This document shows, piece by piece, positions 6,093 to 61,276 of a stretch of 64,000 bases of DNA. Each line of letters starts with the position of its first letter. Positions within the stretch are counted from its first letter, which is position 1. The position numbers and the translations under genes were made by a program. Location of the stretch: sequence record LR756502.1; one strand, written 5' to 3'. A model generated the notes under the pieces. That model did not search any database, was not told where the DNA came from, and saw only the letters and a program-made list of their open reading frames with translations.

Positions 6093-6656
6093 ATGAAAGA
6101 TGATGTTTTTACCTTTGATGATTTTTTTAAAAATCCAAAGAAATCCGAATTAGTTAAAGAGAGTATTCAAGAAGAGCAATCTAATGAGAATCCCGATGAG
6201 CAAACTTCTGATGTTATAGAAAATGTTCAGGAGGAAGTAAAGGATGTTCAAGAGGAGGTTTTAGAAACTAATGAAGACATCGATAATAATAATTACTATA
6301 ATGTGTTTATGGATAAGAACGAAGAGTTTTCTTGTGACATATCTATTGAAGGTGCTAAGAAAGATGAAACCTATGTTAGATTAGTAATTGAATCTGATGA
6401 TTGGACTCTTATGTTTAATGGTGAGATAAGAAATGGTAAATGTTACATTCCTATAAGAAAGTTAAATATCTTAACTGAAGGTCAAGTTGGTAATATAAGA
6501 CTTGAAGTAATAGCTGAGGGCAATCTCTTTACTCCTTGGGAAGATAAATTTAAAGTTAAATTATCAAAAAAGGTTACTGTTAAAGTAAATGAACAAAAAG
6601 ACTCTACAAAGTTTGACAAGAATAGAGTTGGTGTTAAAGTAAATGTTAATAAGTAA
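6093..6656 (+). CDS. Hypothetical acidic protein
   Basis: 187-aa ORF; acidic low-complexity N-half and beta-rich C-half; weak CTS-like start (VFTFDDF). Confidence 0.75.
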   Translation: MKDDVFTFDDFFKNPKKSELVKESIQEEQSNENPDEQTSDVIENVQEEVKDVQEEVLETNEDIDNNNYYNVFMDKNEEFSCDISIEGAKKDETYVRLVIESDDWTLMFNGEIRNGKCYIPIRKLNILTEGQVGNIRLEVIAEGNLFTPWEDKFKVKLSKKVTVKVNEQKDSTKFDKNRVGVKVNVNK

Positions 6657-7121
6657 CTAAAATCCAGGTAGTCCACTTGGTAGATAACTATCTAAGTATG
6701 ATATATCAGTCACCCATTCAAACCTACTACGATCTGACCATAATTTGAAGGAGTTATCAATATAATCATATGATTCCTTTAGTTTTAAAGAGTTTACCTT
6801 TGCTAAGTGTTTAGCTACCCTATCAAGTTGACCATTTATTTGAGCCAACCCAACATGTTTTGTTTTATGACACATTGGACAAAGTGATATAAGTCCTTCT
6901 AACTTTTGAATGAAATTTATATCATCATATGACCATATCTCATGACACTCAACTGCATGTTTTATACCTTGATTGAATCCAGTATCTTTACAAATTTCGC
7001 ATTTATTTCCAGCTAACTCATAACAATGTTTCCTTATCTTATCCCATTCAGACTTGGTTACATTACTTCTAACATTTGTATACCAACAAGTCCTTGGTAC
7101 TAATTCTATTGTCAGCTTCAT
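6657..7121 (-). CDS. HNH endonuclease family protein
   Basis: CEICKD...ECHEIW...LCPMCHKTKH zinc-binding HNH signature; ATG 7121 preferred over TTG 7127. Confidence 0.8.
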   Translation of the reverse strand: MKLTIELVPRTCWYTNVRSNVTKSEWDKIRKHCYELAGNKCEICKDTGFNQGIKHAVECHEIWSYDDINFIQKLEGLISLCPMCHKTKHVGLAQINGQLDRVAKHLAKVNSLKLKESYDYIDNSFKLWSDRSRFEWVTDISYLDSYLPSGLPGF

Positions 7122-7123
7122 TT

Positions 7124-7357
7124 TCAAATAAATATTCTTTTCCTAACTATTGTATCATATTCATTACTTGAGTTAAAATAATATAATATCCTATTGGTCT
7201 TTTGACCCCTTTTTAATTTTATACCTTTAACCTTCTCATTCTCACAAACTGTCGCAACATAATAACCAAAATACCTTAATATTGGATTTATCATAACCTT
7301 GAGCAGTGATCGATGGTTTACTATTCTACCATCTTTGTATAGAATACCTAATCTCAT
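7124..7357 (-). CDS. Hypothetical basic protein
   Basis: 77-aa ORF coupled to the upstream gene by a 1-nt stop/start overlap. Confidence 0.6.
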   Translation of the reverse strand: MRLGILYKDGRIVNHRSLLKVMINPILRYFGYYVATVCENEKVKGIKLKRGQKTNRILYYFNSSNEYDTIVRKRIFI

Positions 7358-8133
7358 TAGTCATCTGAGAAGTTTTGTTCAAATGATAACATAAGATTTG
7401 AATTGGATCCTTTTATTAACATAAAGTTGTCAAATATATTAAACTCCACGTCCTGACTCTCATCTATACATGATAGGAACTTCTTATTTAGAATTAGATT
7501 AGAGTTTCTATCTTTATCTAATTGGTCTACTTCTAGTTCCCATGCTGCTGTTTCTGATAAGATTACTTTACCTGACATTATATTAATTGATATTAATCTA
7601 TCTGCGTTTATACTTGATAACTTCTTAACATCACCAAAGTCTGCTTTGGATATGGTGAATGCCCACTTCCTGTTCTTAAGGTCTAATCTCTGGTCTAGTT
7701 GGGGTTTTGTTATGTCTTTTAATTCATATTGTTCACCACCTACCCAGTTTATCTTTAACTTTCCACCAACAATTTGTACTGACCTTGCGTTCATAACTGT
7801 CTCATCATCTGTTGATGCTTTATACGATACTTCCATTGTCACTTTATCAGATGTCTTTAGAAAGGTTAAGTTCTTTACAAACTTACCAGAATTTGCAATT
7901 ACTATATCGAGTGAATATTCCATATCATCTTCATATTCAAGATACTCTCTAGTTTTTATAACATAGTTTTTGAATGCTAGTATAACATTACTACCAATCA
8001 TTGAATACATTAGTATGTTATCGTTATCTATTTTTAGTTTAACAGTATCACTTATTTTTGTAAGGTCGCTTATTTTATCTATAAAGTCTGAAATTTTATC
8101 AGGATTTACTTTGAACTTAATTTTATTTGCCAT
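7357..8133 (-). CDS. Probable sliding clamp (gp45/PCNA-like)
   Basis: 258 aa with a two-domain alternating alpha/beta pattern and clamp-like size; fold inferred, no diagnostic motif. Confidence 0.5.
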   Translation of the reverse strand: MANKIKFKVNPDKISDFIDKISDLTKISDTVKLKIDNDNILMYSMIGSNVILAFKNYVIKTREYLEYEDDMEYSLDIVIANSGKFVKNLTFLKTSDKVTMEVSYKASTDDETVMNARSVQIVGGKLKINWVGGEQYELKDITKPQLDQRLDLKNRKWAFTISKADFGDVKKLSSINADRLISINIMSGKVILSETAAWELEVDQLDKDRNSNLILNKKFLSCIDESQDVEFNIFDNFMLIKGSNSNLMLSFEQNFSDD

Positions 8134-8193
8134 TTTAGATATAGTTTTTGATACTTAATATATCAATTGATTCTTATTTTGTTTATTTGTATT

Positions 8194-8221: not shown

Positions 8222-9076
8222 ATGATTAAAAAATGGGGTGATTTCATAAGAGAGTTTGTAGATGAGCCTATAAATGTAGATTATATAAACTCTCGTATGC
8301 ATGAGTTAAAAGACACCGTCATGCAAACACAAAATGATCAATATAATGATGATGACTTTTATTTAGGACTTGAATGGTCTATTGAAGGAAAATCACATGA
8401 TAATAATAGTCAAGGTCAGTTAAATATCAACTTCTCAACTGTTGATGGTGATATTAGATTTGAATTTGATTTAGATAGATTAGAAATTAATAAAATTGAA
8501 AATGAATCTTCTATATCCAATAATATAAAGTCTATGAAAATTTCCTCAGTTGAAGAGGGTCTTGATATTATTGAAAAGTATATTTATAACTACCTTGGTG
8601 TATCTGAGTCCGTAGTAAATGAGTGGATCGATATCCAAACCAATACACCAATTGCCGACGCCTTGTTGGTTACATACCTTTTGCTTTTTATGAAATGGAG
8701 AGATTTGACAATTGAAAATCTTGTTAATAATACAAAGAAGATTGTAATTGACTTTGCTAAGTTTTTGAATGGATATGGTTATCCAATTGATGTTGATGTG
8801 TTGGAGAATAGGTTTGATAAAATAGTAAAGATGGTAACTATTAAAGCGAAGAGTGATCGTTTGCGTGAATCGTTTGTAGGTAAATTTGATTATAAAGATC
8901 TAATTGGTAAAAAGGTTAGGATTGTTAGATTAGAAGATCCATACACACATCTAAAACCAGGTGATGAGGGCACTGTTAGAGGTGTTGATGATGCTGGTCA
9001 TATTATGATGAAGTGGGATAGTGGGTCTACTCTAAATATAATTCCTGAAATAGATGAATTTGACGTAATAGATTAA
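8222..9076 (+). CDS. Protein with C-terminal DUF4314-like domain
   Basis: C-terminus GKKVRIVRLEDPYTHLKPGDEGTVRGVDDAGHIMMKWDSGSTLNIIPEIDEF matches the DUF4314 pattern. Confidence 0.7.
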   Translation: MIKKWGDFIREFVDEPINVDYINSRMHELKDTVMQTQNDQYNDDDFYLGLEWSIEGKSHDNNSQGQLNINFSTVDGDIRFEFDLDRLEINKIENESSISNNIKSMKISSVEEGLDIIEKYIYNYLGVSESVVNEWIDIQTNTPIADALLVTYLLLFMKWRDLTIENLVNNTKKIVIDFAKFLNGYGYPIDVDVLENRFDKIVKMVTIKAKSDRLRESFVGKFDYKDLIGKKVRIVRLEDPYTHLKPGDEGTVRGVDDAGHIMMKWDSGSTLNIIPEIDEFDVID

Positions 9077-10534: not shown

Positions 10535-10608
10535 ATATTTTAGTTTTAGTTATTGAAAAATCTTTCTTAAATGTGATTCCTTATGTAATCATAGGTTGTT
10601 CCCATATA

Positions 10609-11582: not shown

Positions 11583-12005
11583 TTATTTAAGTATTTTACT
11601 TAGTTTATGATCTCTAATTTCTTTTCTTATGCTTGGGATATGACTTGAGAATAATTTATATATCTCACTTCTTAGTTCGGGTATTGTTTGTACTTGGTAA
11701 TCTAACCTACTCTTCTTGTCCTCCTTGGTTAGGATGGATATACAGTGTTCATAATATTTTCTTTTTATTGACTCGTCTGTTATTTCCTCACCCCACTTCA
11801 ATATTTCCTTGTTGAATTTAGACCAATTACATAAATAATTGGTACTTTTCCTATTACTCTTAATTGAAGAAATTAGATTAAATATTGATGCTCCTATAAG
11901 GACAACAGGTATTAATATGAGTGTTATTGTTAATATTACATGTACCATAACTGAAACAAATATACGGATAAATTTCGAATCACAAAAGCTTTTTAATGTT
12001 CTCAT
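11583..12005 (-). CDS. Membrane protein with C-terminal IRDHKLSKIL motif
   Basis: Long hydrophobic N-terminal segment; 140 aa. Confidence 0.7.
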   Translation of the reverse strand: MRTLKSFCDSKFIRIFVSVMVHVILTITLILIPVVLIGASIFNLISSIKSNRKSTNYLCNWSKFNKEILKWGEEITDESIKRKYYEHCISILTKEDKKSRLDYQVQTIPELRSEIYKLFSSHIPSIRKEIRDHKLSKILK

Positions 12006-12422: not shown

Positions 12423-14378
12423 ATGTGTAAAAATCATAATCATAATCATAGTAAAAAAATCTTCAAATTTGAAGATTTTGTTAATGAGAGCAAGGTAATA
12501 GAATTACTGATAGAGGGAAACCTTACAGCTTCTGATAAATTTCTTAAAAAACTATCCTTGATAAGAAGTAATCCTATCGCGGATACACTGTATAATGCCT
12601 TCCTAAATAAGACACATATTGATAAAGACTTATCTCAAAATTGGGTAGATGTTAGTGATAAAGAAGATGTTGTGACTTTTATGGCGGATAGAGGTGCTAG
12701 TAGGTTAGATAATAAACCAGAGTCTATTTTTTCTGCAAATAGGAATGAAATAAAGGTTGGTAGATTTGCTAGAGCTATACTAACTGAACTTGGACAAACT
12801 GTTGCTGATAAAGACATTGAAGTATTTGTTAATACATATAAAGCATCAAACGTGGATACAACTAAAAAGTTTGAGATGGTTAGTGGTAAAGATATTAAAA
12901 AATATTACCACGAGGATAGCTATTCTTCCGATAAAGGCACACTCGGTGATTCCTGTATGAGATATGATAACTGTGAAAAATACTTTAAGATATATACTAA
13001 AAATCCAAAATATTGTCAATTATTGGTGTATTTGGATGACAATGGTAAGGTATTGGGAAGAGCCCTTGTTTGGAAACTTAAAAAGAAAAAGCTTTTTAAT
13101 ATAAAGGACCAGAGTAAGTATGATTGTCCAGCTATTTATTTTATGGATAGGGTTTATACAACATCTGATTCTGATGTTGTTAAATTTACTAACCTGGCTA
13201 AAGAAAAAGGATGGTTATATAAATGGAAGATGACCGCTGATACAGAGCAAGGTCTTATATTTAGATATAATGATCAAATACTTTTCGGTCAAATAACTGT
13301 CGAATTGGACAAAGTGGAGTTTAGAAACTATCCATTTTTTGATACATTATCATTTTGTGATGGTGATTCTTATATAAGTAACGTTGGTTTAATTGGTGAT
13401 GATGCATTCACTATGTGTAGTACAGAGGGTGAGAGTGAACCATGTTGTGATTGTGATGGAGATGGGTATGATAAGGATAATGATGGAGATTGTAGAGCTT
13501 GTAGTGGTAGTGGTAATATGGATGATCCAAAATGTGGTGGAATGGGTCAGGAAATTTGTATTAAGTGTGATGGGGATGGAAGTATAGTTTGTAAAAAATG
13601 TAATGGAGATGGATCTTATGATTGTCCAAGCTGTAGCGAGGGTGATATTAATTGCGTGAAGTGTGGTGGTAACGGATATAAAGAATGCTCGGTTTGTAAA
13701 GGGACTGGGGATGGAGATCATTGTACAAAATGCAAAGATGGTACTTTGTCTTGTTCAGAATGTGGTGGAAAGCCTGTCACATGTAAGACTTGTAAGGGAT
13801 CTTGTAGTATAGTGAAAAAATGGGGAGTTGGTAAAAGAACAGTGAGTTGTCCAGATTGTGGTGGATTGGGTGTTGGTTTAAGTGGACCTGACTCACAAAC
13901 TGGTTGTAGATGTGACAAATGTTCATGTACTACATTTTCTGATGGTAGTTGGGACTTTTGGAGAAACACAGGAGTTGTTGATTGTGAAGAATGTGATGGT
14001 CTTGGTACTTTACCATGTATAGAATGTAAAGATAAAGAGGGTGGATTTCACATTGGTTGTATAGAATGTGAGGTTTGTGATGGTAATGGTAGTAAGCCTT
14101 GTGAGGTTTGTAAAGGAAATAGATCATATACACATGGTTCAATTGAATGTGAGGTTTGTAAAGGAAATGGTAGTATTGGAGAATGTGATAAATGTAAAGG
14201 ATCCGGATCTCTTGGTAAATGTAAGAACCCATCATGTGATAATGGTAAGGTAACTTGTCTACTGTGTAATGGTAAAGGGGAAGACCTAAGAACGGGTAAA
14301 ATTTTATGCCCATCGTGTACTGGACTACTCGATATATTTAAGGAAGACCTAAAATGTGGTATTTTTACGCTAAAATGA
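12423..14378 (+). CDS. Large protein with ~20 DnaJ-type CxxCxGxG zinc-finger repeats
   Basis: N-half has SCMR..GRALVW..FMDRVY; C-half has about 20 CxxC(xGxG) units; no J domain (no HPD). Confidence 0.85.
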   Translation: MCKNHNHNHSKKIFKFEDFVNESKVIELLIEGNLTASDKFLKKLSLIRSNPIADTLYNAFLNKTHIDKDLSQNWVDVSDKEDVVTFMADRGASRLDNKPESIFSANRNEIKVGRFARAILTELGQTVADKDIEVFVNTYKASNVDTTKKFEMVSGKDIKKYYHEDSYSSDKGTLGDSCMRYDNCEKYFKIYTKNPKYCQLLVYLDDNGKVLGRALVWKLKKKKLFNIKDQSKYDCPAIYFMDRVYTTSDSDVVKFTNLAKEKGWLYKWKMTADTEQGLIFRYNDQILFGQITVELDKVEFRNYPFFDTLSFCDGDSYISNVGLIGDDAFTMCSTEGESEPCCDCDGDGYDKDNDGDCRACSGSGNMDDPKCGGMGQEICIKCDGDGSIVCKKCNGDGSYDCPSCSEGDINCVKCGGNGYKECSVCKGTGDGDHCTKCKDGTLSCSECGGKPVTCKTCKGSCSIVKKWGVGKRTVSCPDCGGLGVGLSGPDSQTGCRCDKCSCTTFSDGSWDFWRNTGVVDCEECDGLGTLPCIECKDKEGGFHIGCIECEVCDGNGSKPCEVCKGNRSYTHGSIECEVCKGNGSIGECDKCKGSGSLGKCKNPSCDNGKVTCLLCNGKGEDLRTGKILCPSCTGLLDIFKEDLKCGIFTLK

Positions 14379-14905
14379 AGTATATTAAAAACATAAATGA
14401 ATTCTTTGATACTGAGGACCTAAAGTCCAAGATGGAAATTCCATATTTAAAAGGGGAAATTCCTTTCAAGGAAATTGTAAAAGATAAGAATATGTTATCA
14501 TATGGTGATGGACTACTTGCTAAGTTATTAATAGATTGTCCCTATATTGGTCAGTTAAACTATAATAGGCTAAGCAATACTATATTAAACCTTGGGTTCC
14601 ATAAAAATATAAATTTTGATGGTAAGGATGTATTAATATATTTTGTTATAGAGATAATGGAGAGCTCAGTAAACAATAGATTTATATCCAATACCTATGC
14701 TAGGTGTGTTAGTGGAGACTACCTATTTGATAAGGCAATAAAGAAGGGAACCTTTGGTTATCAAGGATTGGTGACCTCTCTAAATAATGAAACACTTGAT
14801 CTATTGGTTGAATTTAATAATTTTACTAATAATAAATTTGGAATAAAGTGTGTGCCATTTATAACCAGAGAGTACATGAAGGAATTTAATGTTGGTAGAA
14901 ACTAA
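14375..14905 (+). CDS. Hypothetical protein with CTS-like N-terminus
   Basis: ATG 14375 overlaps the upstream TGA (ATGA); begins MKYIKNINEFF. Confidence 0.75.
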   Translation: MKYIKNINEFFDTEDLKSKMEIPYLKGEIPFKEIVKDKNMLSYGDGLLAKLLIDCPYIGQLNYNRLSNTILNLGFHKNINFDGKDVLIYFVIEIMESSVNNRFISNTYARCVSGDYLFDKAIKKGTFGYQGLVTSLNNETLDLLVEFNNFTNNKFGIKCVPFITREYMKEFNVGRN

Positions 14906-16215: not shown

Positions 16216-16668
16216 TGGTTGGGTATATTTATTTACTAAAATGTCCTCTAACAGAGGAAGTTAAATATATTGGGTTAACAAGAAATTATAAGAAAAGAAA
16301 AAGTCAACATAGATGCTATAGCGAATCTATGTCTAAGAACCATCAATATAATAAGTGGAAAGATACTCTAAAACTATCTGGAAAGAGACCTATTTTTGAA
16401 ATTATTGAAGAGAACTAGTGAATCTCTAAAGGGTGAGAATAACCCAAATTACAAAGGGGTAAATTGTACTAGGGAATGGAAAGAAAGTCAGTCCAAGTCA
16501 CAAAGCAAAACTCCACTATTAATATATGATGGTGATATCTTAATCAAAGAGTTTTCTAATTCTAAAGAGGCTGCTCAATTTTTAAATTGTTCTGAATCTA
16601 ACATAAGGGAATGTAAGAGAAATGGATGGCTTATAAAAAGGAAATATAAAATAGTTAAAAAATATTAA
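16215..16668 (+). pseudogene. Split GIY-YIG homing endonuclease (catalytic fragment plus NUMOD DNA-binding fragment)
   Basis: 16215..16418 has GYIYLL...KYIGLT...R; 16396..16668 in the +1 frame has KGENNPNY and FSNSKEAAQFL..SESNI. Confidence 0.7.
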
Positions 16669-16674
16669 TATATA
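16666..16674 (+). promoter_or_regulatory. Putative late promoter TAATATATA
   Basis: Exact motif 4 nt upstream of ATG 16679. Confidence 0.65.
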
Positions 16675-16678
16675 GTGT

Positions 16679-17845
16679 ATGATTAACAATTTTATAAAGT
16701 TCATAAATGAAGAGATAACTATAGGAAAAATGGATCCTAAAACACTCTCTACTATTAAGGATAACTTAGTTGAGAGATTAGATGAGTATAAGGATTATAT
16801 ACTTGGTTCTATATCTTATGATATTAAGACCAATAAGGTAGTATATAATGATGACTTTGATAATATTGACCTAAGTATTATAATGAGAGAGCTTATAAAT
16901 GAGTTTTCTCAGGACATTATCGATGATCTAAATGTGGATACATTTCTAAGAAAAATACATCAAATAATTGATTTGAGGAAAAGAAATACCAAAAAGCAGA
17001 TTCGTGATGAGTTTGTTGAGTATTACATTTCATTAAATAATAGGATTGAAAGAATGTATAAGAGAATAAACCAGCCTGAACAATATAAGGATTTTGGTGA
17101 GGAAGAAGATGAAACATCTATTCTTGGAAGAAAAGAATATGAATCAGAAAAATATGACATCCAAGTTGAGTTAATGAAACTTCAAGAGTGGGTAATGAAA
17201 AATAATAAAAGAATAGCTATTGTTTTTGAAGGTAGAGATGCTGCTGGAAAAGGATCTACAATAAAGAGATTTACAGAATATTTGAATCCTAAGGGGTTTA
17301 AGGTTGTTGCTCTTGGTGTTCCAACTGATGAAGAAAGAAAAGACTGGTTTGGTAGATATGAAAAGCACTTACCTAAAGATGGTGAGATAGTTTTCTTTGA
17401 TAGATCTTGGTATAATAGATCAGTTGTTGAACCAGCTATGGGTTATTGCACAGAGGATCAATATATGGAATTCATGGAAAACGTTGTTGATTGGGAAGAA
17501 GAAATGATGGATGATGGATTGATATTAATTAAGTTGTGGTTCTCTATTACAAAGGAGAAGCAATTACTTAGATTTGAAGCTAGAAAGAAAAGCCCACTAA
17601 AATATTGGAAATTTTCACCAAATGATGCTAAGGTAATTGATAAATGGGATATAATAACTAAATATAAAAATCAAATGTTTAATAATGCATCTAGTTCTAA
17701 ATCTCCTTGGATTATAATAAATTCAAATGATAAGAGAATAGGCATGTTGAATGCTATGAGGTATGTTCTTTGGGACATTGACTATGATAACAAGGATGAG
17801 TCTGTTAGTGAGTGGTACCCAGAGGTTGTGCATGTGATAAAATAG
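16679..17845 (+). CDS. ppk2: Polyphosphate kinase 2 with ~150-aa N-terminal extension
   Basis: FEGRDAAGKGSTIKR Walker A, FFDRSWYNR Walker B, LIKLWFSITKEKQLLRF and WKFSPND motifs. Confidence 0.93.
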   Translation: MINNFIKFINEEITIGKMDPKTLSTIKDNLVERLDEYKDYILGSISYDIKTNKVVYNDDFDNIDLSIIMRELINEFSQDIIDDLNVDTFLRKIHQIIDLRKRNTKKQIRDEFVEYYISLNNRIERMYKRINQPEQYKDFGEEEDETSILGRKEYESEKYDIQVELMKLQEWVMKNNKRIAIVFEGRDAAGKGSTIKRFTEYLNPKGFKVVALGVPTDEERKDWFGRYEKHLPKDGEIVFFDRSWYNRSVVEPAMGYCTEDQYMEFMENVVDWEEEMMDDGLILIKLWFSITKEKQLLRFEARKKSPLKYWKFSPNDAKVIDKWDIITKYKNQMFNNASSSKSPWIIINSNDKRIGMLNAMRYVLWDIDYDNKDESVSEWYPEVVHVIK

Positions 17846-17854: not shown

Positions 17855-18322
17855 ATGGAAAATATAAAATCATTTGATAGTTTTAATGAGAAAAAGTGGA
17901 TTAAAGATGCTATTGAGCATCCAGGATCACTTAGAAGATCATTAAAAAAGAAGAAAGGTGAGAAGATCACTAAGTCTGAAATAGGGTCAGAGATATCTAA
18001 ACTAAAAAAGAAAGATAAGGATAAAGACAAACCAGGACTTCAACTTGGTAATAGAGATAAGACTAAGTATAAGAAACTTGTTCTTGCCAAAACTCTTAAA
18101 TCTATGAAAGAAAGTAATGAAGGAGACACACAAAACTATATGTTTTTCAGTAATCTACAAACTATTAAGAGGTTGGTTGATGATATGTTAGAAATGGATG
18201 AAAAAGAGGTAGATGATATGTTATCAGATGGTCATGGTTGGGCCACAGATCATATAGCTACATCGAAAGATGACGTTGAAGAGGTTTATAACTTCCTCAG
18301 AGGAACTAGTGATTCTAAATAG
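17855..18322 (+). CDS. Hypothetical basic/acidic protein with CTS-like N-terminus
   Basis: MENIKSFDSFNE; KWIKDAIEHPGSLR basic module; NYMFFSNL...GHGWATDHI module. Confidence 0.75.
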   Translation: MENIKSFDSFNEKKWIKDAIEHPGSLRRSLKKKKGEKITKSEIGSEISKLKKKDKDKDKPGLQLGNRDKTKYKKLVLAKTLKSMKESNEGDTQNYMFFSNLQTIKRLVDDMLEMDEKEVDDMLSDGHGWATDHIATSKDDVEEVYNFLRGTSDSK

Positions 18323-18360: not shown

Positions 18361-18948
18361 ATGAAATACCTAAAACGATTTAATGAAGAACTTGATCCAA
18401 AGACTTATATGTCTGCTGGTAAATCCTTACAAAGTAAGGGTCATGTGGCCAGGGGTCAGAAGTTAATTGATTATTCAAATTCAAATTCAAAAATGTCGGG
18501 TATTGCCGATGAGTTTGAATTCACTTCAAGTGGTAAAAAATATTTAGCAAAATGGGACTATACAAAGGGTGTATTTGAGACAGCTGATGGGAAAAGAATA
18601 TACTTAAAGGGTACTAATCTATTTTGTAATTCATACCCAATAAGACGAGGGGAGTCTCATCCACACGCATATGTTACTAATCGTAAGGATGCTGTTAATC
18701 TACTTAAATTTTTGAAAACAGTTATTACTACTCAACATCCTCGCGCCTTACCTGTTATGCCAACTATAAATGATTTATATCAAGAGGATGCTCCTAAAAG
18801 TTTGGCAATACCGAAAGATACTAACACAGTGGATAATTACTATGATAGTGGATCACTTAATAATAAAAAGGTATCAAAATCAAACTGGTTTAAGAGAAAT
18901 ATTTATCCAGGAAGTACAAAATCTGGGGATGATGGTGCTGATTTTTAA
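18361..18948 (+). CDS. Hypothetical protein with CTS-like N-terminus
   Basis: Begins MKYLKRFNEE; 195 aa. Confidence 0.75.
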   Translation: MKYLKRFNEELDPKTYMSAGKSLQSKGHVARGQKLIDYSNSNSKMSGIADEFEFTSSGKKYLAKWDYTKGVFETADGKRIYLKGTNLFCNSYPIRRGESHPHAYVTNRKDAVNLLKFLKTVITTQHPRALPVMPTINDLYQEDAPKSLAIPKDTNTVDNYYDSGSLNNKKVSKSNWFKRNIYPGSTKSGDDGADF

Positions 18949-21033: not shown

Positions 21034-21345
21034 ATGCAATATATTAAAAAGTTTGAAGATTTGGATTTTTCACAAACACTTCCAGTTACAAGTGTTAATG
21101 TTCTAACGAACTATTATCATTGTGATTCTTGTAATGCTCTTTGGAAAGAACTTAATAAACAGTGTAATAGATGTAAGTTTTGTAATGGTTCTGATGTAGA
21201 GGAGTTATCAGAAGATGAATGGTATGAATCTGTTAAGGGTAGGTTAGATGATGAAGATGGTGATATAGACGAAGATAGATTGAGAGATGAAAACCACTTT
21301 CTGGATTTCTCAGAATGTGATGACCTATATGATGATGAAAATTAA
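21034..21345 (+). CDS. Zinc-ribbon protein with CTS-like N-terminus
   Basis: MQYIKKFED; CDSC...CNRCKFC; acidic tail. Confidence 0.75.
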   Translation: MQYIKKFEDLDFSQTLPVTSVNVLTNYYHCDSCNALWKELNKQCNRCKFCNGSDVEELSEDEWYESVKGRLDDEDGDIDEDRLRDENHFLDFSECDDLYDDEN

Positions 21346-23741: not shown

Positions 23742-24131
23742 ATGAAGAAATTTAACGAATTTAATAGAGTAAATGAAGGTTCTGATCCAGAACAAACTTT
23801 AATGGAAAATTTATTTTCATTTTTCTATAAAAAATACAGTGTAGTATCTATAGCAAAGGTTGAATCTAACTTCATCGAATCCGCTTCTAAGTTAGTTTCT
23901 GATGGTGAGATTAGTGAAATTGCTTATAAAAAGTTTTTAGACTCAAAGGGAATAGATGTTAAAAAACATAAAACACCAATTTCTGTTGGACGTTCCTTAA
24001 GCTTTACTCCTGATGATGAATGTGGATCATCATCCAGAAGATCTTCATCATCAAGATCATCATCTTGTGGTGATTCAAAACCATCTTCCGATTGTGGAAT
24101 GGGTGGTGGGTATAGTACAAGTCGTTGTTAA
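23742..24131 (+). CDS. CTS-like protein with Ser/Gly/Cys-rich C-terminal tail
   Basis: MKKFNEFNRVNE...DECGSSSRRSSSSRSSSCGDSKPSSDCGMGGGYSTSRC. Confidence 0.8.
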   Translation: MKKFNEFNRVNEGSDPEQTLMENLFSFFYKKYSVVSIAKVESNFIESASKLVSDGEISEIAYKKFLDSKGIDVKKHKTPISVGRSLSFTPDDECGSSSRRSSSSRSSSCGDSKPSSDCGMGGGYSTSRC

Positions 24132-47507: not shown

Positions 47508-47533
47508 ATATATAAAAAAATTAATAAAAAGAA

Positions 47534-49069: not shown

Positions 49070-49086
49070 AAAAATAATAAAATAGA

Positions 49087-50712: not shown

Positions 50713-50976
50713 CTACTTTGATAAAATAGTATCTATGTTTTCTTTTGAAAATCCTTCTAATGGAGAACCTCCCGATTTAAGATAGTTTTGGTATAAATCT
50801 TGATACATATCAACCGTATAGAATTTATCATCCAAATCAGAGTATATTATATTTGTATGTCTATCAGAAATAGTTTTATTTTGAGTTCTAGTTTCTCCAT
50901 AAGCCGGTCCAACTGGTCCAACCAATTCGGTTCCTGAAACTTCCTCATTAAATGATTTGAATGATTTAATTGCCAT
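50713..50976 (-). CDS. Small protein with CTS-like N-terminus
   Basis: ATG 50976: MAIKSFKSFNEE. Confidence 0.75.
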   Translation of the reverse strand: MAIKSFKSFNEEVSGTELVGPVGPAYGETRTQNKTISDRHTNIIYSDLDDKFYTVDMYQDLYQNYLKSGGSPLEGFSKENIDTILSK

Positions 50977-51433
50977 TTTTAATTGGGATCTTTTCATAAT
51001 ATTCGTCCTGAGCCTCCAAAGAGTACTCATCCTTTTTGCTATTGTAGATTATATTATATAAGAACTTATCATGTAACTCATGAGTTTCTCCATTTTTAAG
51101 AGTCATTACACAAGTTTCATTCTCGAAGTCATTTTCAATTCCACTTATCTTTGTTGAAATTTTACCATCCTTATCATATAGGTCACATATAACACTTTTA
51201 CCCTTTTCTAATAGGTTTTTAATTTTGTTAAATGTTGTGTTTTTTGATAAATACATATAGTCATTCATATCTTCCTCAGAAGTTGAATTATATAAGTCCA
51301 AGAAATTTTTCTCCTTATCCTCTAAGTTTTTCTTTTTAGAAACCTTATCAAGAATCCTATTTAGTTCCATCTCTTTAACAGACTCACCTAGTAGGTAGTG
51401 CTTTATGAATTTTTTGAATCCCATAATTTCCAT
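50966..51433 (-). CDS. Hypothetical protein with DUF6576-like motif
   Basis: MGFKKFIKHYLLGE; ELNRILDKVSKKKNLEDKEKNFL. Confidence 0.75.
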   Translation of the reverse strand: MEIMGFKKFIKHYLLGESVKEMELNRILDKVSKKKNLEDKEKNFLDLYNSTSEEDMNDYMYLSKNTTFNKIKNLLEKGKSVICDLYDKDGKISTKISGIENDFENETCVMTLKNGETHELHDKFLYNIIYNSKKDEYSLEAQDEYYEKIPIKNGN

Positions 51434-51456: not shown

Positions 51457-51465
51457 TATATATTA
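51457..51465 (-). promoter_or_regulatory. Putative late promoter TAATATATA
   Basis: Exact motif upstream of ATG 51433. Confidence 0.65.
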
Positions 51466-57674: not shown

Positions 57675-58793
57675 ATGAAAGCGTTCATCACAACAGATTG
57701 GCATTTTGGAGTTTATTTAAATAACTTGGATAAATGGTTAAATACAATGGAGGATTATTTCTATAACGATTTTATACCATATATAAAAGAGAATGTTAAG
57801 GAAGGTGATATACTTATTCATTGTGGTGACCTTTATGATAACAGAACCTCAATTCCAATTATCGCCTCATATAAAGCCGAAAAAATACTTCTTGAATTAT
57901 CAAAAATTCTACCATTACATATAATAGTTGGTAATCATGACCTATGGAATAAAGGATCTAATGATGTGAACTCTGTTAGGTTATTTAACTATGTTGATAA
58001 TGTTAATGTATATACTGAGACAAATAGTATAGTAATTGATGGTAAAAAACTCGTTCTAATGCCTTGGGTGGAGAAACGAGTTGATATGATCAGTGAGATT
58101 AAGAATAACCCAGGAGACTATTTATTCTGTCACTCCGACCTAAATGGATGTAGAATGCATCTTAGCTCAGTCGCTCATAGAAATGCTGATAAAATTGATG
58201 TGGATGAGTTTGGTGGATATAAGCATGTTTTTTCTGGACACATACACATAACACAGACAAATAATAACTTCTCATTTATTGGTAGTCCATATCAAATGGA
58301 TAGAAATGATATGGGTGATCAAAAAGGAATAACTATATTAGACCTTACTACTGGTAAAATAGACTTTTCACCAAATAAATACTCACCCGTATTTAGAAAA
58401 GTCTCAGTTTTGAAGGAGGAGGACGTTGATGGTCTTGATGAATTGACCGGTAGTAAAGATTATATTGACTTATCAATATCAAATAGTCTTTTAATAAGTA
58501 ATCGAAAACTTAGAAGAAAGTTAGAGACGCTTTTGGAGAAGGGTGGATTTTCATCAGTTGAATATATTGATGATATTGTTAAGAGTCAAGAGGAAATGGA
58601 TATTATCAAAGAATCAATTTCTGATGGTGATGATGATATAACTCCATCGGTTGATCTAGAATATGCTGATTATATAAGAGAGTATATTTTGAAGCAAAAT
58701 TATGATAATGAGGATTTTAAGTCTGGTATTTTGAGTGAATTTGATGATGTTGTTAAGATATATAATGAAAACTATAAGTCACTAAAGGATTAG
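57675..58793 (+). CDS. gp47: Recombination endonuclease subunit (T4 gp47 / SbcD / Mre11)
   Basis: TDWHFG, CGDLYDNR, VGNHD, CHSD and SGHIH metallophosphoesterase motifs; GSPYQMDRND. Confidence 0.92.
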   Translation: MKAFITTDWHFGVYLNNLDKWLNTMEDYFYNDFIPYIKENVKEGDILIHCGDLYDNRTSIPIIASYKAEKILLELSKILPLHIIVGNHDLWNKGSNDVNSVRLFNYVDNVNVYTETNSIVIDGKKLVLMPWVEKRVDMISEIKNNPGDYLFCHSDLNGCRMHLSSVAHRNADKIDVDEFGGYKHVFSGHIHITQTNNNFSFIGSPYQMDRNDMGDQKGITILDLTTGKIDFSPNKYSPVFRKVSVLKEEDVDGLDELTGSKDYIDLSISNSLLISNRKLRRKLETLLEKGGFSSVEYIDDIVKSQEEMDIIKESISDGDDDITPSVDLEYADYIREYILKQNYDNEDFKSGILSEFDDVVKIYNENYKSLKD

Positions 58794-59222
58794 TTCTCCA
58801 ATTTTAGAAATTGTAATAACAAACATATAGTTATATATTTGAGTGTGTACTCTATACCCTTCAGATTCAATGTGTTTAGATGAGTCTACTATTTCGGATA
58901 GTGTATTTTGTAATTTAATAATATCTTTGGTTGATATTGAATGAGAATCATGTCCATATTCCTCGTAGAATGGTACACTATCTTCATATGGTAATTCACC
59001 TGTGATCATAATAACTTTAATATCTTCTGTTTCTTCTGGGTGTTTATCTTCTGTTTCTTCTGGCTCAGCAGAGACATGATATTCTGTTGTTCCTGATAAC
59101 CATTGGTGTGATATTTCAATATTGTTTAGATGATCATCCAGATTTGCAAATACCTCCTTAACCTCTTGTATAGAGATAAAGTTATCACTTTTCATATTTT
59201 CGTTAAATCTTCTAATTCTCAT
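58782..59222 (-). CDS. Hypothetical acidic protein with CTS-like N-terminus
   Basis: ATG 59222: MRIRRFNE. Confidence 0.75.
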   Translation of the reverse strand: MRIRRFNENMKSDNFISIQEVKEVFANLDDHLNNIEISHQWLSGTTEYHVSAEPEETEDKHPEETEDIKVIMITGELPYEDSVPFYEEYGHDSHSISTKDIIKLQNTLSEIVDSSKHIESEGYRVHTQIYNYMFVITISKIGELIL

Positions 59223-59223
59223 A

Positions 59224-59553
59224 TTACTTCTTGGTCTTAGTCTTTTCTGATGGATCAAATCCAAAGTCATTAAATTTCTTAACGTGTGGTTCTACTAATT
59301 TTTTTACATCCTTAGAGTCAATATGATCATCCTCGTCCGTTAGGTATGTATATCCGGTACCCTCTGGTGATATTAGATCCTCTGGATTTAGACCCACTTT
59401 TTGAATATTTTTTGAAGGATCTGATGTCATATAATCAGGACTAGTTGTATAGAACTTTGGTAATCCAACACTACCAACTGATGCTACATTATCTTTTATG
59501 GTGTATCTTCCTTTACCCTCATTAAGTTCACTGAATCTTTTAAGATGTTTCAT
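59224..59553 (-). CDS. Hypothetical protein with CTS-like N-terminus
   Basis: MKHLKRFSELNEG. Confidence 0.75.
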   Translation of the reverse strand: MKHLKRFSELNEGKGRYTIKDNVASVGSVGLPKFYTTSPDYMTSDPSKNIQKVGLNPEDLISPEGTGYTYLTDEDDHIDSKDVKKLVEPHVKKFNDFGFDPSEKTKTKK

Positions 59554-59588
59554 ATTTTTATTATTTTTTAGTTTTTACTAGATATTTT

Positions 59589-60908
59589 TTAATTAATAAT
59601 TTCCAGACAAATTCTTCTTTGTCTCCAATTTTCATCATTTCCAGCTCTTAGGTTAATTGCATGGATAAGAGTTCTGATATTTAGGTCAAATTTAACAGGG
59701 AAATTATCCGTAACGAATGTTAAATACTCAAGAGCCTCTTCTTTAAGTTCCATACTCACATCCGGCATCATTTTACTCATAATCTCCTTCATTCTTCCTA
59801 TTATTTCCATCTTGTTAAGATGTACATCAACATGTAGAGATCTTGATATTAAAGCATCATCAAATTTTTCCTCTGGTAAATTTGATATGAAGATAACCTG
59901 TCCTCTAAATTCAAATCTATTTGGTAAAATTTTCTCACCAGTAGCTTCCCACTTTGCTTGTATTTCCTTATCCAACATCCCAGTTGAATCAAATGTATTT
60001 CCTTTAGTGTGTTTAGCTAATTCCCTTACATCATAAGTGTCTAAAGCCCCTTTAAGCATATTTATTGAGTCTGGGTCCTTAAATACCGCATCACAATCAT
60101 CAAATATAACAAGCTTATTTCTATTTTTAAATAGAATTTCATACAGAGCAGCTGTTGTTACCGTTCCAGTTGACTTATAATAATGTATATCTGGTATCAT
60201 TCCTATTGACTTTAGTGTATCTGTTACTGTTGCTGTTTTGCCAACTCCTGCCATTCCAGTTATTACTAATGCATTACTTTTACCTCTCGCCACTTGTATT
60301 GTATATAATTCAATGGCCTTAAAAACATCTATTTTAAGGTCATCTTGTGTCATACTATCACTATCCTTTTCCACGGTTTCTTCGTGAGCTATTGAAGCTC
60401 TTAGTCTCTCTATTCTCTGTGATATTTTTTCTTTCGATTCTGTGCTTCTAGCTCTTTTAAGTCTCTTTTCTTGATCTTTTATCTCTTCTAAAGGATCATA
60501 TCTCTCAACCATTACACCTTCTTCTTCACCAACTGTAACGTAAGAAATAGGATTTTTGAAAAAATCAACAATTTGTTGTATAAATTTTATAACAGATAAT
60601 CCTTCTAGGTGTAGTGTGTAGTCTGGCTTTGTATCAAATGAGAATGAGTTCCAAGTATCAATAGATTCTATCTCACTTCTTATATCATCTTTAATCCAAT
60701 TTATTCTAACCGCCCTACTAGATTTAAGTGATAGAAACAATTGACCTGTTAGAAATAAATCACCTTTTTGAATATGGAATAATTCATCATATGGATATAA
60801 ATCTATTCCTGTTTTGCTTGTTAAATTTGAAATTATAAGATCGATAGCCTTTTCTTTATCTCTATTTAGGAAAGCTTCGTAGAAAGCCTGATATTTTTTT
60901 ATTTTCAT
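59589..60908 (-). CDS. AAA+ ATPase with CTS-like N-terminus
   Basis: ITGMAGVGKT Walker A, LVIFDDCD Walker B, IFISN sensor and ALISRS; begins MKIKKYQAFYE. Confidence 0.85.
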   Translation of the reverse strand: MKIKKYQAFYEAFLNRDKEKAIDLIISNLTSKTGIDLYPYDELFHIQKGDLFLTGQLFLSLKSSRAVRINWIKDDIRSEIESIDTWNSFSFDTKPDYTLHLEGLSVIKFIQQIVDFFKNPISYVTVGEEEGVMVERYDPLEEIKDQEKRLKRARSTESKEKISQRIERLRASIAHEETVEKDSDSMTQDDLKIDVFKAIELYTIQVARGKSNALVITGMAGVGKTATVTDTLKSIGMIPDIHYYKSTGTVTTAALYEILFKNRNKLVIFDDCDAVFKDPDSINMLKGALDTYDVRELAKHTKGNTFDSTGMLDKEIQAKWEATGEKILPNRFEFRGQVIFISNLPEEKFDDALISRSLHVDVHLNKMEIIGRMKEIMSKMMPDVSMELKEEALEYLTFVTDNFPVKFDLNIRTLIHAINLRAGNDENWRQRRICLEIIN

Positions 60909-61276
60909 AAATTTTTAATTTTTTTAAGAATTTTCTCACATTTTTCATACTTTTCCAACCTCTCATATTCCTTTAGCATCTCCTGTAGTTGAGGTTTATC
61001 ACATAGTTTAAGCTTTATTTCAAATCTAACCTCTTTTAACTGAGACATATTATCAACTTCACTATCTATTAATTTATTAACAACTTCCCTATCAAATGTG
61101 GTCATTGCACAGAAATCGTTCCAGTCTTTAACATCATTTGATCTAAGAAATTCAAGAATATTAAAAACACACTTATCAATCTTATTGCTTTTATTCATAG
61201 ACTCTTTCTTTGACTTTGATCCTAATGAAAATATACTTTCTGTTATAAATTCTTTATATTTTCTAATTCTACTCAT
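60905..61276 (-). CDS. Hypothetical protein with CTS-like N-terminus and UVR-like C-terminus
   Basis: MSRIRKYKEFITES...EYERLEKYEKCEKIL. Confidence 0.75.
   Translation of the reverse strand: MSRIRKYKEFITESIFSLGSKSKKESMNKSNKIDKCVFNILEFLRSNDVKDWNDFCAMTTFDREVVNKLIDSEVDNMSQLKEVRFEIKLKLCDKPQLQEMLKEYERLEKYEKCEKILKKIKNL

What the first reader, a model, noticed from the sequence alone, without database searches (positions are those of the whole stretch)
6093..61276. A T4-like capsid-targeting tag on ~15 unrelated late proteins: candidate large virion-packaged enzyme cargo
Seen: unrelated ORFs start with M-x-[KR]-[ILHY]-[KRT]-[KRS]-[FY]-x-[ED]-F...[FILV]-x-E. Examples: 8222 MIKKWGDFIRE; 12423 ..KIFKFEDFVNE; 14375 MKYIKNINE; 16679 (PPK2) MINNFIKFINE; 17855 MENIKSFDSFNE; 18361 MKYLKRFNE; 21034 MQYIKKFED; 23742 MKKFNEFNRVNE; 25067 MQITKFTDYVKVNE; 50976 MAIKSFKSFNE; 51433 MGFKKFIKHYLLGE; 59222 MRIRRFNE; 59553 MKHLKRFSELNE; 60908 (AAA ATPase) MKIKKYQAFYE; 61276 MSRIRKYKEFITE; weakly 6093. 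All lie in units headed by TAATATATA. The motif is absent from the late tail/fibre/tube proteins and from the genes under the three host-type promoters. Known: T4 IPII/IPIII use MKTYQEFIAE to enter the prohead, the tag is clipped after Glu by protease gp21 (I/L-x-E), and the proteins are injected with the DNA. T4 has only three such internal proteins. Inference: this phage uses a modular tag to load many enzymes into the head for delivery at infection. One partial counterexample is 11583..12005 (MRTLKSFCDS), a membrane protein with no late motif.
Basis: partly seen in the sequence, partly recalled or inferred. Interest (0 to 1): 0.92.

Follow-up and report, generated by a model that had tools for sequence, protein, structure and literature searches.

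The report
Capsid-targeting-like tag on many megaphage proteins
About one in seven proteins of this 642-kb uncultured phage starts with the same 9-11-residue peptide, which looks like the tag that phage T4 uses to load proteins into its head and then cuts off. The phage may therefore ship a very large protein cargo with its DNA, but nobody has yet looked inside the particle.

Summary
The window is bases 124001-188000 of LR756502.1, an unannotated 642,428-bp uncultured phage.

**Observation.** All 16 quoted N-termini are present. By a profile trained genome-wide, 6 are strong, 3 moderate and 7 weak or unsupported.

**Scale.** The motif is far bigger than reported. 154 of 990 ORFs score at least 10 bits, against 0.2% of internal-Met controls. 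After trimming the N-terminus, the 150 ORFs picked by the first scoring matrix fall into 140 BLAST-unrelated families.

**Nature of the signal.**
- Selection is on the peptide, because synonymous codons vary.
- The motif ends in Glu rather than Asp (70:3).
- It is enriched behind the phage-specific TAATATATA box (65/165 genes). It is nearly absent behind host-type Bacteroidota promoters (3/69).

**Context.**
- The genome has a T4-type head module: Gp20 portal, Gp23 capsid protein, and a gp21-family protease fused to a repeat scaffold full of hydrophobic-x-Glu sites.
- The bodies of tagged proteins avoid hydrophobic-x-Glu.
- The cultured relative PAU carries an analogous tag on its scaffold and on proteins its depositors call internal capsid proteins.

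**Verdict.** The T4-like targeting and propeptide reading is the best explanation (about 0.6), but it is unproven. "Enzyme cargo" is overstated: most tagged proteins are small, acidic and of unknown function.

The parts
14375..14905 (+). 176-aa ORF with a strong tag (reads MKYIKNINE then F). The true start is the internal ATG of the longer ORF 14354-14905.
   Evidence: 19.1 bits. The public gene call uses this start. No Pfam or PHROG match.
18361..18948 (+). 195-aa ORF with the strongest tag in the window (MKYLKRFNE then E).
   Evidence: 20.0 bits. Only 3 distant homologues among 5.8 billion proteins.
59224..59553 (-). 109-aa ORF with a strong tag (MKHLKRFSELNE then G).
   Evidence: 18.7 bits. 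No family match.
21034..21345 (+). 103-aa ORF with a strong tag (MQYIKKFED). TAATATATA lies upstream at 21004.
   Evidence: 12.4 bits. The orthologue in LR745206 starts MEHIKKFETFDF.
23742..24131 (+). 129-aa ORF with a strong but shifted tag (MKKFNEFNRVNE then G).
   Evidence: 10.7 bits. TAATATATA at 23710.
60905..61276 (-). 123-aa ORF with a strong tag (MSRIRKYKEFITE then S). It heads a four-gene minus-strand unit.
   Evidence: 10.3 bits. The TAATATATA reverse complement is at 61281-61289, 4 nt from the ATG.
50713..50976 (-). 87-aa ORF with a moderate tag (MAIKSFKSFNE then E).
   Evidence: 9.4 bits. The public gene call is 87 aa.
17855..18322 (+). 155-aa ORF with a moderate tag (MENIKSFDSFNE then K).
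   Evidence: 7.3 bits. Matches phrog_15706, of unknown function.
59589..60908 (-). 439-aa ORF with a moderate tag (MKIKKYQAFYE then A). Possibly a P-loop NTPase.
   Evidence: 6.3 bits. phrog_1250 at 1e-38 (unknown function); faint helicase and clamp-loader hits; no Pfam hit on record.
12423..14378 (+). 651-aa ORF with a degenerate tag after a His/Asn-rich insertion (...KKIFKFEDFVNE then S). It belongs to an 8-paralogue family.
   Evidence: 5.4 bits. Several paralogues also start with basic-aromatic-x-x-aromatic-[IV]-[NS]-E. The orthologue starts MLTKYESFLLE.
16679..17845 (+). PPK2 polyphosphate kinase with a degenerate tag (MINNFIKFINE then E) on an N-terminal extension of about 145 aa.
   Evidence: PF03976. 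1.4 bits. Other phage PPK2s align only from about residue 145. The orthologue keeps NFxKFINEE.
8222..9076 (+). DUF4314 protein with a degenerate tag (MIKKWGDFIRE then F).
   Evidence: 1.3 bits. The orthologue is 38% identical overall and reads MIKKWNQFIREF at its start, 9 of 12 residues identical. PF14192.
58782..59222 (-). 146-aa reading from an internal ATG (MRIRRFNE then N). Weak tag; the start is uncertain.
   Evidence: 4.7 bits. The public call uses the upstream ATG at 59270.
50966..51424 (-). 152-aa ORF (MGFKKFIKHYLLGE then S). Weak tag.
   Evidence: 3.1 bits. The public call starts at 51424.
11583..12005 (-). 140-aa membrane protein. Its first seven residues fit the tag, but there is no Glu and a transmembrane segment follows.
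   Evidence: 9.6 bits. Hydrophobic segment from residue 22. No TAATATATA upstream.
6093..6656 (+). 187-aa ORF. The tag is not supported.
   Evidence: -1.7 bits.
25067..25156 (+). 29-aa ORF. The tag is not supported.
   Evidence: 0.3 bits. Length.
16666..16674 (+). TAATATATA box 4 nt before the PPK2 ATG. It is an example of the short-spacing class. Other plus-strand copies start at 5732, 6080, 8194, 12408, 15451, 21004, 21802, 23710, 25038, 33435, 38607, 44229, 48358, 49971 and 61316.
   Evidence: Positions. Spacing classes.
51457..51465 (-). TAATATATA box (reverse complement) upstream of the 51424 gene. Other minus-strand copies start at 1215, 5690, 19924, 20956, 56895 and 61281.

Best explanation
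The peptide is a T4-type prohead-core targeting sequence combined with a propeptide. Steps 1-3 and 6 below are inferred; none has been observed. Steps 4 and 5 are shown by sequence.

1. A short N-terminal segment docks the protein onto the scaffolding core while the prohead assembles. It has hydrophobic residues at positions 4 and 7 and basic residues at positions 2, 5 and 6.
2. The gp21-family (S77) head protease then cuts after the conserved Glu at position 8, 9 or 11.
3. The mature protein stays in the head and probably leaves with the DNA at infection.
4. The tag is portable. It sits on about 150-190 otherwise unrelated proteins, 13-17% of the coding capacity.
5. These genes are transcribed from the phage-specific TAATATATA promoters, as the virion genes are.
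6. The cargo is mostly small acidic proteins of unknown function, with a few enzymes. By analogy with the T-even internal proteins, it may be a pre-loaded arsenal for host takeover or anti-defence.
For: 1. **Real and specific to N-termini.** 154 of 990 ORFs score at least 10 bits, against 6 of 3130 internal-Met controls.
2. **Portable.** After removing 15 residues, the 150 ORFs picked by the first scoring matrix form 140 BLAST families, 127 of them singletons.
3. **Peptide-level.** Synonymous codons vary: His CAT 33 / CAC 38; Leu TTA 53, CTA 26, CTT 11, TTG 8; Lys at position 5 AAA 52 / AAG 37.
4. **Column shares in the 150.** Position 4 is Leu or Ile in 146. Position 7 is Tyr or Phe in 134. 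The first Glu is at position 8, 9 or 11 in 119. In T4 IPIII, positions 4 and 7 carry targeting and positions 8 and 10 carry processing (PMC9026906).
5. **Glu, not Asp, at the predicted cut.** 70 Glu to 3 Asp, p = 5.5e-20. The T4, phiKZ and SPN3US head proteases all cut after Glu (PMC5694885). Asp at position 10 blocks processing in T4.
6. **T4-type head module in the same genome.**
   - Portal: PF07230, 1.3e-57.
   - Capsid protein: PF07068, 3.7e-28.
   - Protease: phrog_207, 6e-28, with tblastn hits to genes annotated as prohead core scaffold and protease.
   - The protease is fused to about 10 copies of a 14-residue repeat. Each copy holds a Tyr-x-Glu and an [Ile/Leu]-Ala-Glu.
7. **Co-regulation.** 65 of 165 genes behind TAATATATA are tagged, against 3 of 69 behind host-type TAnnTTTG boxes (odds ratio 14, p = 5e-9).
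8. **Avoidance of the cut motif.** The bodies of tagged proteins avoid hydrophobic-x-Glu relative to hydrophobic-x-Asp. The fraction is 0.392 against 0.447 in shuffles (z = -5.1). It is z = -4.8 in a non-redundant set, and z = -0.7 in matched acidic untagged proteins.
9. **Cultured relative PAU.** The same capsid-protein lineage has an analogous N-terminal tag on 15 of 65 ORFs in a 41.7-kb stretch. Ten of these lie in the head module. They include the scaffold gp152, and gp142 and gp154, which are annotated 'internal capsid protein'.
10. **Virus-specific.** It occurs 9 times in 596 Gb of bacterial and archaeal genomes.
Against: - There is no proteomic or structural observation for this phage or for any tagged protein.
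- The number of tagged proteins (15-19% of ORFs) has no precedent. T4 has a handful, and SPN3US has 8 processed head proteins out of about 50 (PMC5694885).
- Tagged proteins are acidic (median pI 5.2), whereas the T4 internal proteins are basic.
- About a quarter of tags (Glu directly at position 8) lack a hydrophobic residue three places before the Glu.
- Six tagged proteins have a hydrophobic segment soon after the tag. An SPN3US ejection protein does too.
- The protease match to Pfam S77 is below the curated cut-off (20.2 against 27 bits). There was no sequence hit to a solved structure.
- The related Tenacibaculum phage PTm1 shows no tag cluster in its head module.
- My 'TAATATATA units' also hold replication and chaperone genes, so 'late' is inferred and not shown.
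Confidence: 0.6

Rival explanations
1. The peptide is a recognition or cleavage signal for a phage protease acting in the cytoplasm. It could be a removable pro-sequence or an N-terminal degron that times the activity or turnover of late proteins. Nothing would be packaged.
For: - The Glu requirement and the avoidance of hydrophobic-x-Glu show exposure to a Glu-specific protease. They do not show where that happens.
- The genome also encodes a ClpP homologue (PF00574, 1.6e-77).
- The very large number of tagged proteins is easier to accommodate outside a capsid.
Against: - Known gp21-family proteases act inside proheads.
- The protease here is fused to a scaffold-like repeat, so it is built into the core.
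- In PAU the tag sits on the scaffold protein itself and clusters in the head module.
- Positions 4 and 7 are conserved beyond what a cleavage site alone needs.
Confidence: 0.13
2. The conserved start is a translation signal. Many tagged genes sit 4-8 nt behind TAATATATA and would give leaderless or near-leaderless mRNAs. The first codons, or the nascent peptide, would then be selected for efficient initiation or early elongation.
For: - 54 of 101 short-spacing genes are tagged, against 11 of 64 long-spacing genes.
- Several synonymous biases exist in codons 2-9.
- Codons 3 and 4 co-vary so that T|TTA|AAA is avoided.
Against: - Synonymous sites vary freely at the most conserved residues.
- More than half of tagged genes have no promoter directly upstream and lie inside operons.
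- Host-type promoters also show a 3-7-nt spacing class, and none of those genes is tagged.
- Glu against Asp at 70:3 and the depletion of the motif in protein bodies have no translational explanation.
Confidence: 0.1
3. The peptide targets proteins to some other destination, such as a membrane, export, or a phage-made compartment.
For: A few tagged proteins have a hydrophobic or signal-like segment right after the tag, for example record ORFs 95990-96634 and 544849-545472.
Against: - Only 6 of 149 have such a segment, against 76 of 762 untagged proteins.
- The tag is charged and short, with no hydrophobic core.
- The exact pattern is at chance level in bacterial genomes, so it is not a host sorting signal.
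Confidence: 0.07
4. The motif is an artefact of AT-rich composition or the remnant of one expanded paralogue family.
For: - The genome is about 33% G+C, and Lys, Asn, Ile, Phe and Glu are common.
- A sub-family of 16 proteins shares a second acidic motif.
- Some matrix hits were native N-termini of EF-G, a tRNA synthetase and a Dam methylase.
Against: - Enrichment over internal-Met controls of the same proteins is about 80-fold at 10 bits or more.
- The tagged proteins fall into 140 BLAST families.
- Orthologues keep the N-terminus better than the rest of the protein.
Confidence: 0.02

Closest known systems
Capsid targeting sequence (CTS) of the phage T4 internal proteins IPI, IPII, IPIII and Alt
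   Same: - An N-terminal peptide of about 10 residues on otherwise unrelated proteins.
- Key hydrophobic positions 4 and 7.
- It ends in hydrophobic-x-Glu, cut by the gp21-family protease.
- The genome has a T4-type portal, capsid protein, protease and scaffold.
- T-even internal proteins are described as diverse proteins sharing only the CTS (PMC3012670).
   Different: - The scale differs: about 150-190 genes against a handful.
- The cargo is acidic, not basic.
- Glu sits at position 8, 9 or 11 rather than 10.
- The protease is fused to the scaffold.
- The host is Bacteroidota-type and the genome is 642 kb.
- I made no direct sequence comparison with the T4 peptide.
N-terminal tag of head-module proteins of Sphingomonas phage PAU (NC_019521)
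   Same: - The same capsid-protein lineage.
- A 9-residue start with Lys at position 2, Leu or Ile at position 4, hydrophobic residues at positions 7-8 and Glu at position 9, on many small proteins.
- It is present on the scaffold gp152, and on gp142 and gp154, annotated 'internal capsid protein'.
   Different: - Different residues at positions 3, 5 and 6 (Thr/Ser in PAU rather than His/Tyr and Lys).
- PAU has separate protease and scaffold genes.
- I saw only one 41.7-kb stretch of PAU.
- The basis of the depositors' annotation is not stated in the record.
Processed head and ejection proteins of giant phages phiKZ, 201phi2-1 and SPN3US
   Same: - Many proteins are packaged in a large head.
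- A homologous protease cuts after Glu (PMC5694885).
   Different: - Those propeptides are mostly 80-130 residues long with no shared N-terminal tag.
- The residue three places before the Glu is small (Ala/Ser/Gly) there, not aromatic or aliphatic.
- Only 8 of about 50 SPN3US head proteins are processed.

Membership tests
T4-type capsid targeting sequence | A short peptide (about 10 residues) at the extreme N-terminus | tested here: met
   The profile matches at Met1, or at a plausible alternative start. 154 N-termini match against 6 of 3130 internal-Met controls.
T4-type capsid targeting sequence | Targeting determinants at positions 4 and 7 (T4 IPIII mutagenesis, PMC9026906) | tested here: met
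   Position 4 is Leu or Ile in 146 of 150. Position 7 is Tyr or Phe in 134 of 150. Only the pattern is met; function is not tested.
T4-type capsid targeting sequence | Ends in a hydrophobic-x-Glu processing site, with Glu required | tested here: inconclusive
   - The first Glu is at position 8, 9 or 11 in 119 of 150.
- Glu to Asp is 70:3.
- The residue three places before the Glu is hydrophobic in the two larger classes (43 + 43). It is not in the class with Glu at position 8 (38).
T4-type capsid targeting sequence | Carried by otherwise unrelated proteins | tested here: met
   140 BLAST families among 150 tagged proteins.
T4-type capsid targeting sequence | Genome encodes a gp21-family protease, a scaffolding core, a Gp20 portal and a Gp23 capsid protein | tested here: met
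   These genes lie at record 222545-229167, outside the window.
T4-type capsid targeting sequence | Tagged proteins are found in proheads and virions, and the tag is removed | not testable with these tools
   No proteomic data exist for this phage. No paper on the motif was found.
T4-type capsid targeting sequence | Sequence similarity to the T4 peptide itself | not tested
   No T4 record was fetched, because no tool or paper showed me its accession. No letters from memory were used.
T4 internal proteins (IPI-III) | Small basic DNA-associated proteins | tested here: not met
   Tagged proteins have median pI 5.2 and are richer in acidic residues than untagged ones.
Peptidase S77 (T4 gp21 prohead protease) | Family profile match above the curated threshold | tested here: inconclusive
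   - PF03420 gives 20.2 bits against a cut-off of 27.
- phrog_207 'head maturation protease' gives 6e-28.
- tblastn hits genes annotated as prohead core scaffold and protease in GAP32, PA5oct, Lak, cyanophages and coliphages.
- There is no sequence hit in the PDB, and catalytic residues were not checked.
phiKZ-type long propeptides | Propeptides of about 80-130 residues cut at [Ser/Ala/Gly]-x-Glu | tested here: not met
   The conserved part is 9-11 residues. The residue three places before the Glu is Tyr, Phe, Ile or Leu.
Sec or lipoprotein signal peptide | Hydrophobic core after a basic N-region | tested here: not met
   6 of 149 tagged proteins have a hydrophobic segment in residues 8-65.

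The most novel reading that the evidence does not exclude
A clade of uncultured, AT-rich, Bacteroidota-type phages, from tens of kilobases up to 675-kb contigs, uses one sequence-defined 9-11-residue tag to load well over a hundred different proteins into the head. That is about one seventh of the proteome in this 642-kb phage. The virion would then deliver a pre-made and rapidly diversifying protein arsenal. The cargo of uncultivated phages could be read directly from their genomes.
Probability: 0.4. Interest if true: 0.85.

Novelty: new variant of a known kind. Interest (0 to 1): 0.72.

Why it matters
**If the reading is right.**
- The tag gives a purely sequence-based way to list the packaged, and probably injected, proteins of phages that cannot be grown.
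- It would show that head cargo can scale from a handful of proteins in T4 to more than a hundred. That changes how we think about what a megaphage brings into the cell before any gene is expressed.
- The tagged set is small, acidic, fast-turning-over proteins in tandem arrays. It is a natural place to look for anti-defence factors.
- The cultured relative PAU carries an analogous tag, so the question can be tested by descriptive proteomics.

**If the reading is wrong.** A peptide that marks one seventh of a proteome, and is found almost only in viral contigs, still needs an explanation.

Tried and rejected
- **Composition or chance.** Rejected with internal-Met and shadow-ORF controls.
- **One paralogue family.** Rejected by all-against-all BLAST after trimming the N-terminus. 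Only 16 tagged proteins share a second acidic motif.
- **RNA-level signal.** Mostly rejected by synonymous-codon variation and by the untagged host-type short-spacing genes.
- **First scoring matrix was too loose.** My 7-position matrix counted native N-termini of an EF-G, a class-I tRNA synthetase and a Dam methylase, and an HNH gene with a wrong start. I therefore dropped the idea that translation factors are tagged.
- **Literature.** Searches for the motif letters and for capsid-targeting work on jumbo phages found nothing on this tag.
- **Homologues of window ORF 18361.** Only 3 distant hits, none named.
- **Solved structures.** Sequence searches with the protease domain and the capsid protein gave no hit.
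- **T4 comparator.** I found no T4 accession, so I made no direct comparison with the T4 peptide.
- **Tenacibaculum phage PTm1.** Its head module shows the protease-scaffold fusion but no tag cluster. The Chryseobacterium phage paper has only an SDS gel and no mass spectrometry.
- **Head-module stretches of other relatives.** The 735-, 636- and 462-kb phages and Lak-A1 hold few tags by the LR756502-trained profile: 5, 4, 1 and 1.

Full report
**Identity of the window.** Two megablast searches place the window at positions 124001-188000 of LR756502.1. This is an unannotated 642,428-bp 'uncultured phage' assembly.
- The window is about 33% G+C and has no N runs.
- I fetched the record in 14 overlapping pieces. 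I analysed it piece by piece with a crude gene set: the longest ATG ORFs, chosen greedily without overlap. This gave 990 ORFs of at least 40 aa and 93% coding with the standard code.

**Checking the observation.** All 16 quoted N-termini are present.
- Genome-wide, residues 2-10 of predicted proteins are biased by position. Lys at position 2 is 3.5 times background, His at position 3 is 5.8 times, Leu/Ile at position 4 about 2 times, Lys at position 5 is 2.5 times, Tyr/Phe at position 7 about 2.5 times, and Phe at position 10 is 2.8 times.
- A 7-position matrix picked 150 ORFs, against 0.3% of internal-Met controls.
- A 13-position profile gave 154 ORFs at 10 bits or more, against 6 of 3130 controls. 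It gave 186 ORFs at 6 bits or more, where about 8 are expected.

Column shares in the 150 ORFs:

| Position | Residues (count) |
|---|---|
| 2 | Lys 121, Arg 19 |
| 3 | His 71, Tyr 50 |
| 4 | Leu 100, Ile 46 |
| 5 | Lys 90, Arg 17 |
| 6 | Lys 43, Thr 26, Ser 19, Arg 16 |
| 7 | Tyr 78, Phe 56 |

- The first Glu is at position 8 (36 ORFs), 9 (43) or 11 (40), and never at 10. The next residue is Ser in 54.

In the window:
- Six starts are strong: 14375, 18361, 21034, 23742, 59553 and 61276.
- Three are moderate: 17855, 50976 and 60908.
- Seven are weak or unsupported: 12423, 59222, 51424, 16679, 8222, 25067 and 6093.
- A degenerate form is nevertheless enriched among non-canonical N-termini. [FYILV]-Asn-Glu within residues 6-16 occurs in 4.2% against 1.3%.
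- The orthologues of 8222, 12423, 16679 and 21034 in the 634-kb relative LR745206 keep their N-termini.

**What kind of signal it is.**
- After removing the first 15 residues, the 150 tagged proteins fall into 140 BLAST families at E below 1e-5. Of these, 127 are singletons.
- Only 16 share a second, acidic motif.
- Synonymous codons vary at the conserved residues, so selection is on the peptide.
- The residual codon biases include a coupling between codons 3 and 4 that avoids T|TTA|AAA.
- Tagged proteins have a median length of 161 aa and are acidic (median pI 5.2). They rarely have a transmembrane segment.
- They make up 13.5% of coding residues at 10 bits or more.
- They are concentrated in the first 100 kb of the record; the window is a tag-poor region.
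- Few have a family match. The 150-ORF set, which still included the four false positives below, gave hits to RNA ligase 1, SET, GNAT, lysozyme and DUF6576; apart from RNA ligase 1 I did not map these to individual ORFs.
- The EF-G, tRNA-synthetase and Dam hits of the first matrix were native N-termini. One HNH hit rested on a wrong start. I discarded all four.

**Regulation.**
- TAATATATA lies within 80 nt upstream of 42% of tagged ORFs and 12% of untagged ORFs.
- The spacing from the box to the ATG is bimodal. In the 4-8 nt class, 54 of 101 genes are tagged. In the 18-28 nt class, 11 of 64 are tagged.
- A second promoter class carries the Bacteroidota-type TAnnTTTG box and heads 69 genes. 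Only 3 of these are tagged, against 65 of 165 behind TAATATATA (odds ratio 14, p = 5e-9). None of its short-spacing members is tagged.
- Fibre, portal and other virion genes sit behind TAATATATA. Tagged genes therefore share a promoter with virion genes and are largely absent from the presumably host-transcribed early class.
- 'Late' remains an inference. My loosely defined units also contain chaperone and replication genes.

**The head machinery.** Outside the window, at record 202-232 kb, the genome encodes the following.
- A T4-type large terminase.
- A Gp20 portal (1.3e-57).
- A Gp23 capsid protein (3.7e-28).
- A 699-aa protein whose first ~400 residues match phrog_207 'head maturation protease' (6e-28) and, within residues 22-138, Pfam S77 weakly.
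  - By tblastn this protein matches genes annotated as prohead core scaffold and protease in many T4-related phages.
  - Its middle is a 42-nt repeat with 9.7 copies.
  - Each 14-residue unit holds a Tyr-x-Glu and an [Ile/Leu]-Ala-Glu. These are the kinds of site a Glu-specific head protease cuts when it clears a scaffold.
- The capsid protein has Val-Leu-Glu at residues 18-20 and Ile-Asn-Glu at 41-43, ahead of the conserved fold.
- Two tagged genes sit directly upstream of the portal gene.

**Three further tests.**
1. At the predicted cut position the ratio of Glu to Asp is 70:3. Background is 46:54, giving p = 5.5e-20.
   - This matches the Glu specificity of the T4, phiKZ and SPN3US head proteases (PMC5694885).
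   - It also matches the finding that Asp at position 10 blocks processing of the T4 peptide (PMC9026906).
2. The bodies of tagged proteins under-use hydrophobic-x-Glu relative to hydrophobic-x-Asp.
   - The fraction is 0.392 against 0.447 in shuffles (z = -5.1).
   - It is z = -4.8 after removing redundancy and the acidic-motif family.
   - Matched acidic untagged proteins do not show it (z = -0.7).
   - This is what selection against internal cuts would give.
3. The closest cultured relative by capsid protein is Sphingomonas phage PAU. The lineage also holds Tenacibaculum, Chryseobacterium, Flavobacterium and Prevotella (Lak) phages.
   - In a 41.7-kb PAU stretch, 15 of 65 ORFs start with an analogous peptide.
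   - Ten of them lie in the head module. They include the scaffold gp152, and gp142 and gp154, which the depositors annotate 'internal capsid protein'.

**Distribution.**
Contig lengths run from 4.7 to 675 kb and G+C from 23 to 37%.
- In those stretches 322 of 1493 ORFs are tagged, and TAATATATA is again the commonest upstream word.
- In 596 Gb of bacterial and archaeal genomes the pattern occurs 9 times. I estimate that is near chance level.

**Mechanism.**
- Shown by sequence: a portable, peptide-level, Glu-terminated N-terminal tag, a T4-type head module with a scaffold-fused protease, and shared promoters with virion genes.
- Inferred: the tag docks on the scaffold core, perhaps by imitating part of the scaffold repeat. 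The protease then removes it after the Glu, and the mature protein stays in the head.
- More speculative: the cargo is injected and acts in host takeover or anti-defence, by analogy with the T-even internal proteins (PMC3012670).

**What speaks against it.**
- There is no direct observation.
- The number of tagged proteins is unprecedented.
- The cargo is acidic rather than basic.
- One tag class lacks a hydrophobic residue three places before the Glu.
- The Pfam match of the protease is sub-threshold, and there is no PDB hit.
- PTm1 shows no tag cluster, and other relatives show few tags near their head genes.

**Rivals.** The rivals are cytoplasmic processing or a degron, a translation signal, another destination, and an artefact. 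They are weighed in their own sections.

**Novelty.**
- The concept is known from T4: a short targeting peptide shared by diverse head-internal proteins.
- The lineage, the sequence of the tag, the fusion of protease and scaffold and, above all, the scale appear undescribed in the library I could search.

Noticed in passing
window 9119-11581 and 25425-29543: This is an NAD-salvage and uptake cluster carried by the phage. It holds NAMPT (PF04095), two NUDIX proteins, an AAA_28 NadR-like kinase, a PnuC-type NMN transporter, and a 683-aa TonB-dependent receptor with a signal peptide. An outer-membrane receptor gene in a phage is unusual, and it points to a Bacteroidota-type host.
   Followed up: no
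window 16666-16674 and genome-wide: The spacing from TAATATATA to the ATG is bimodal: 4-8 nt or 18-28 nt. The host-type TAnnTTTG boxes show the same two classes. The short class implies leaderless or near-leaderless mRNAs for about 100 genes.
   Followed up: partly
L005 29272-31368 (record 225272-227371): The head protease is fused to a scaffold-like region. That region is built from about 10 copies of a 14-residue repeat (42-nt period, 72-73% matches), followed by an acidic tail. The Tenacibaculum phage PTm1 homologue is also a fusion. PAU has separate genes.
   Followed up: partly
genome-wide, codons 3-4 of tagged genes: When codon 3 ends in T, Leu at position 4 is mostly CTN. When codon 3 ends in C, it is mostly TTA (odds ratio 0.16, p = 2e-4). 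The run T|TTA|AAA, a slippery-looking heptamer, is thereby avoided.
   Followed up: partly
window 12423-12470: The 651-aa ORF has a His/Asn-rich stretch between Met1 and the tag-like part. The stretch is missing from its orthologue in LR745206. The family has 8 paralogues across the genome.
   Followed up: no
window 16679-17845: The PPK2 domain begins at about residue 145. The N-terminal extension is shared only with the related megaphages.
   Followed up: no
window 14354/14375 and 59270/59222, and several record ORFs: The tag often sits at an internal ATG of the longest ORF. It could therefore be used to correct start-codon calls in this clade.
   Followed up: partly
window 1251-5684 and 33466-50712: There is a 1477-aa collagen-repeat protein (PF01391) and a run of eight large ORFs (343-1080 aa) without family matches. 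Several of the large ORFs are paralogous and are probably fibres. A 1891-aa ORF runs off the window end at 61346, and a sheath gene lies beyond it.
   Followed up: no
window 29546-29788 and 32227-33366 (minus strand): Two window genes sit behind host-type TAnnTTTG boxes and are untagged. They are examples of the presumed early class.
   Followed up: partly
L153 (PAU 94921-136639): 15 of 65 ORFs in this stretch of the cultured phage PAU carry their own version of the tag. Five of them lie outside the head module. PAU may have a large tagged set too.
   Followed up: partly
record 229975-231351 (L005 33975-35348): A 458-aa peptidase-like ORF (phrog_4191, 3e-64) lies just after the capsid gene. 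It is followed by a 172-aa Asp-rich ORF with a tag-like start.
   Followed up: no
I recorded this in the notebook and used the letters for nothing.
   Followed up: yes
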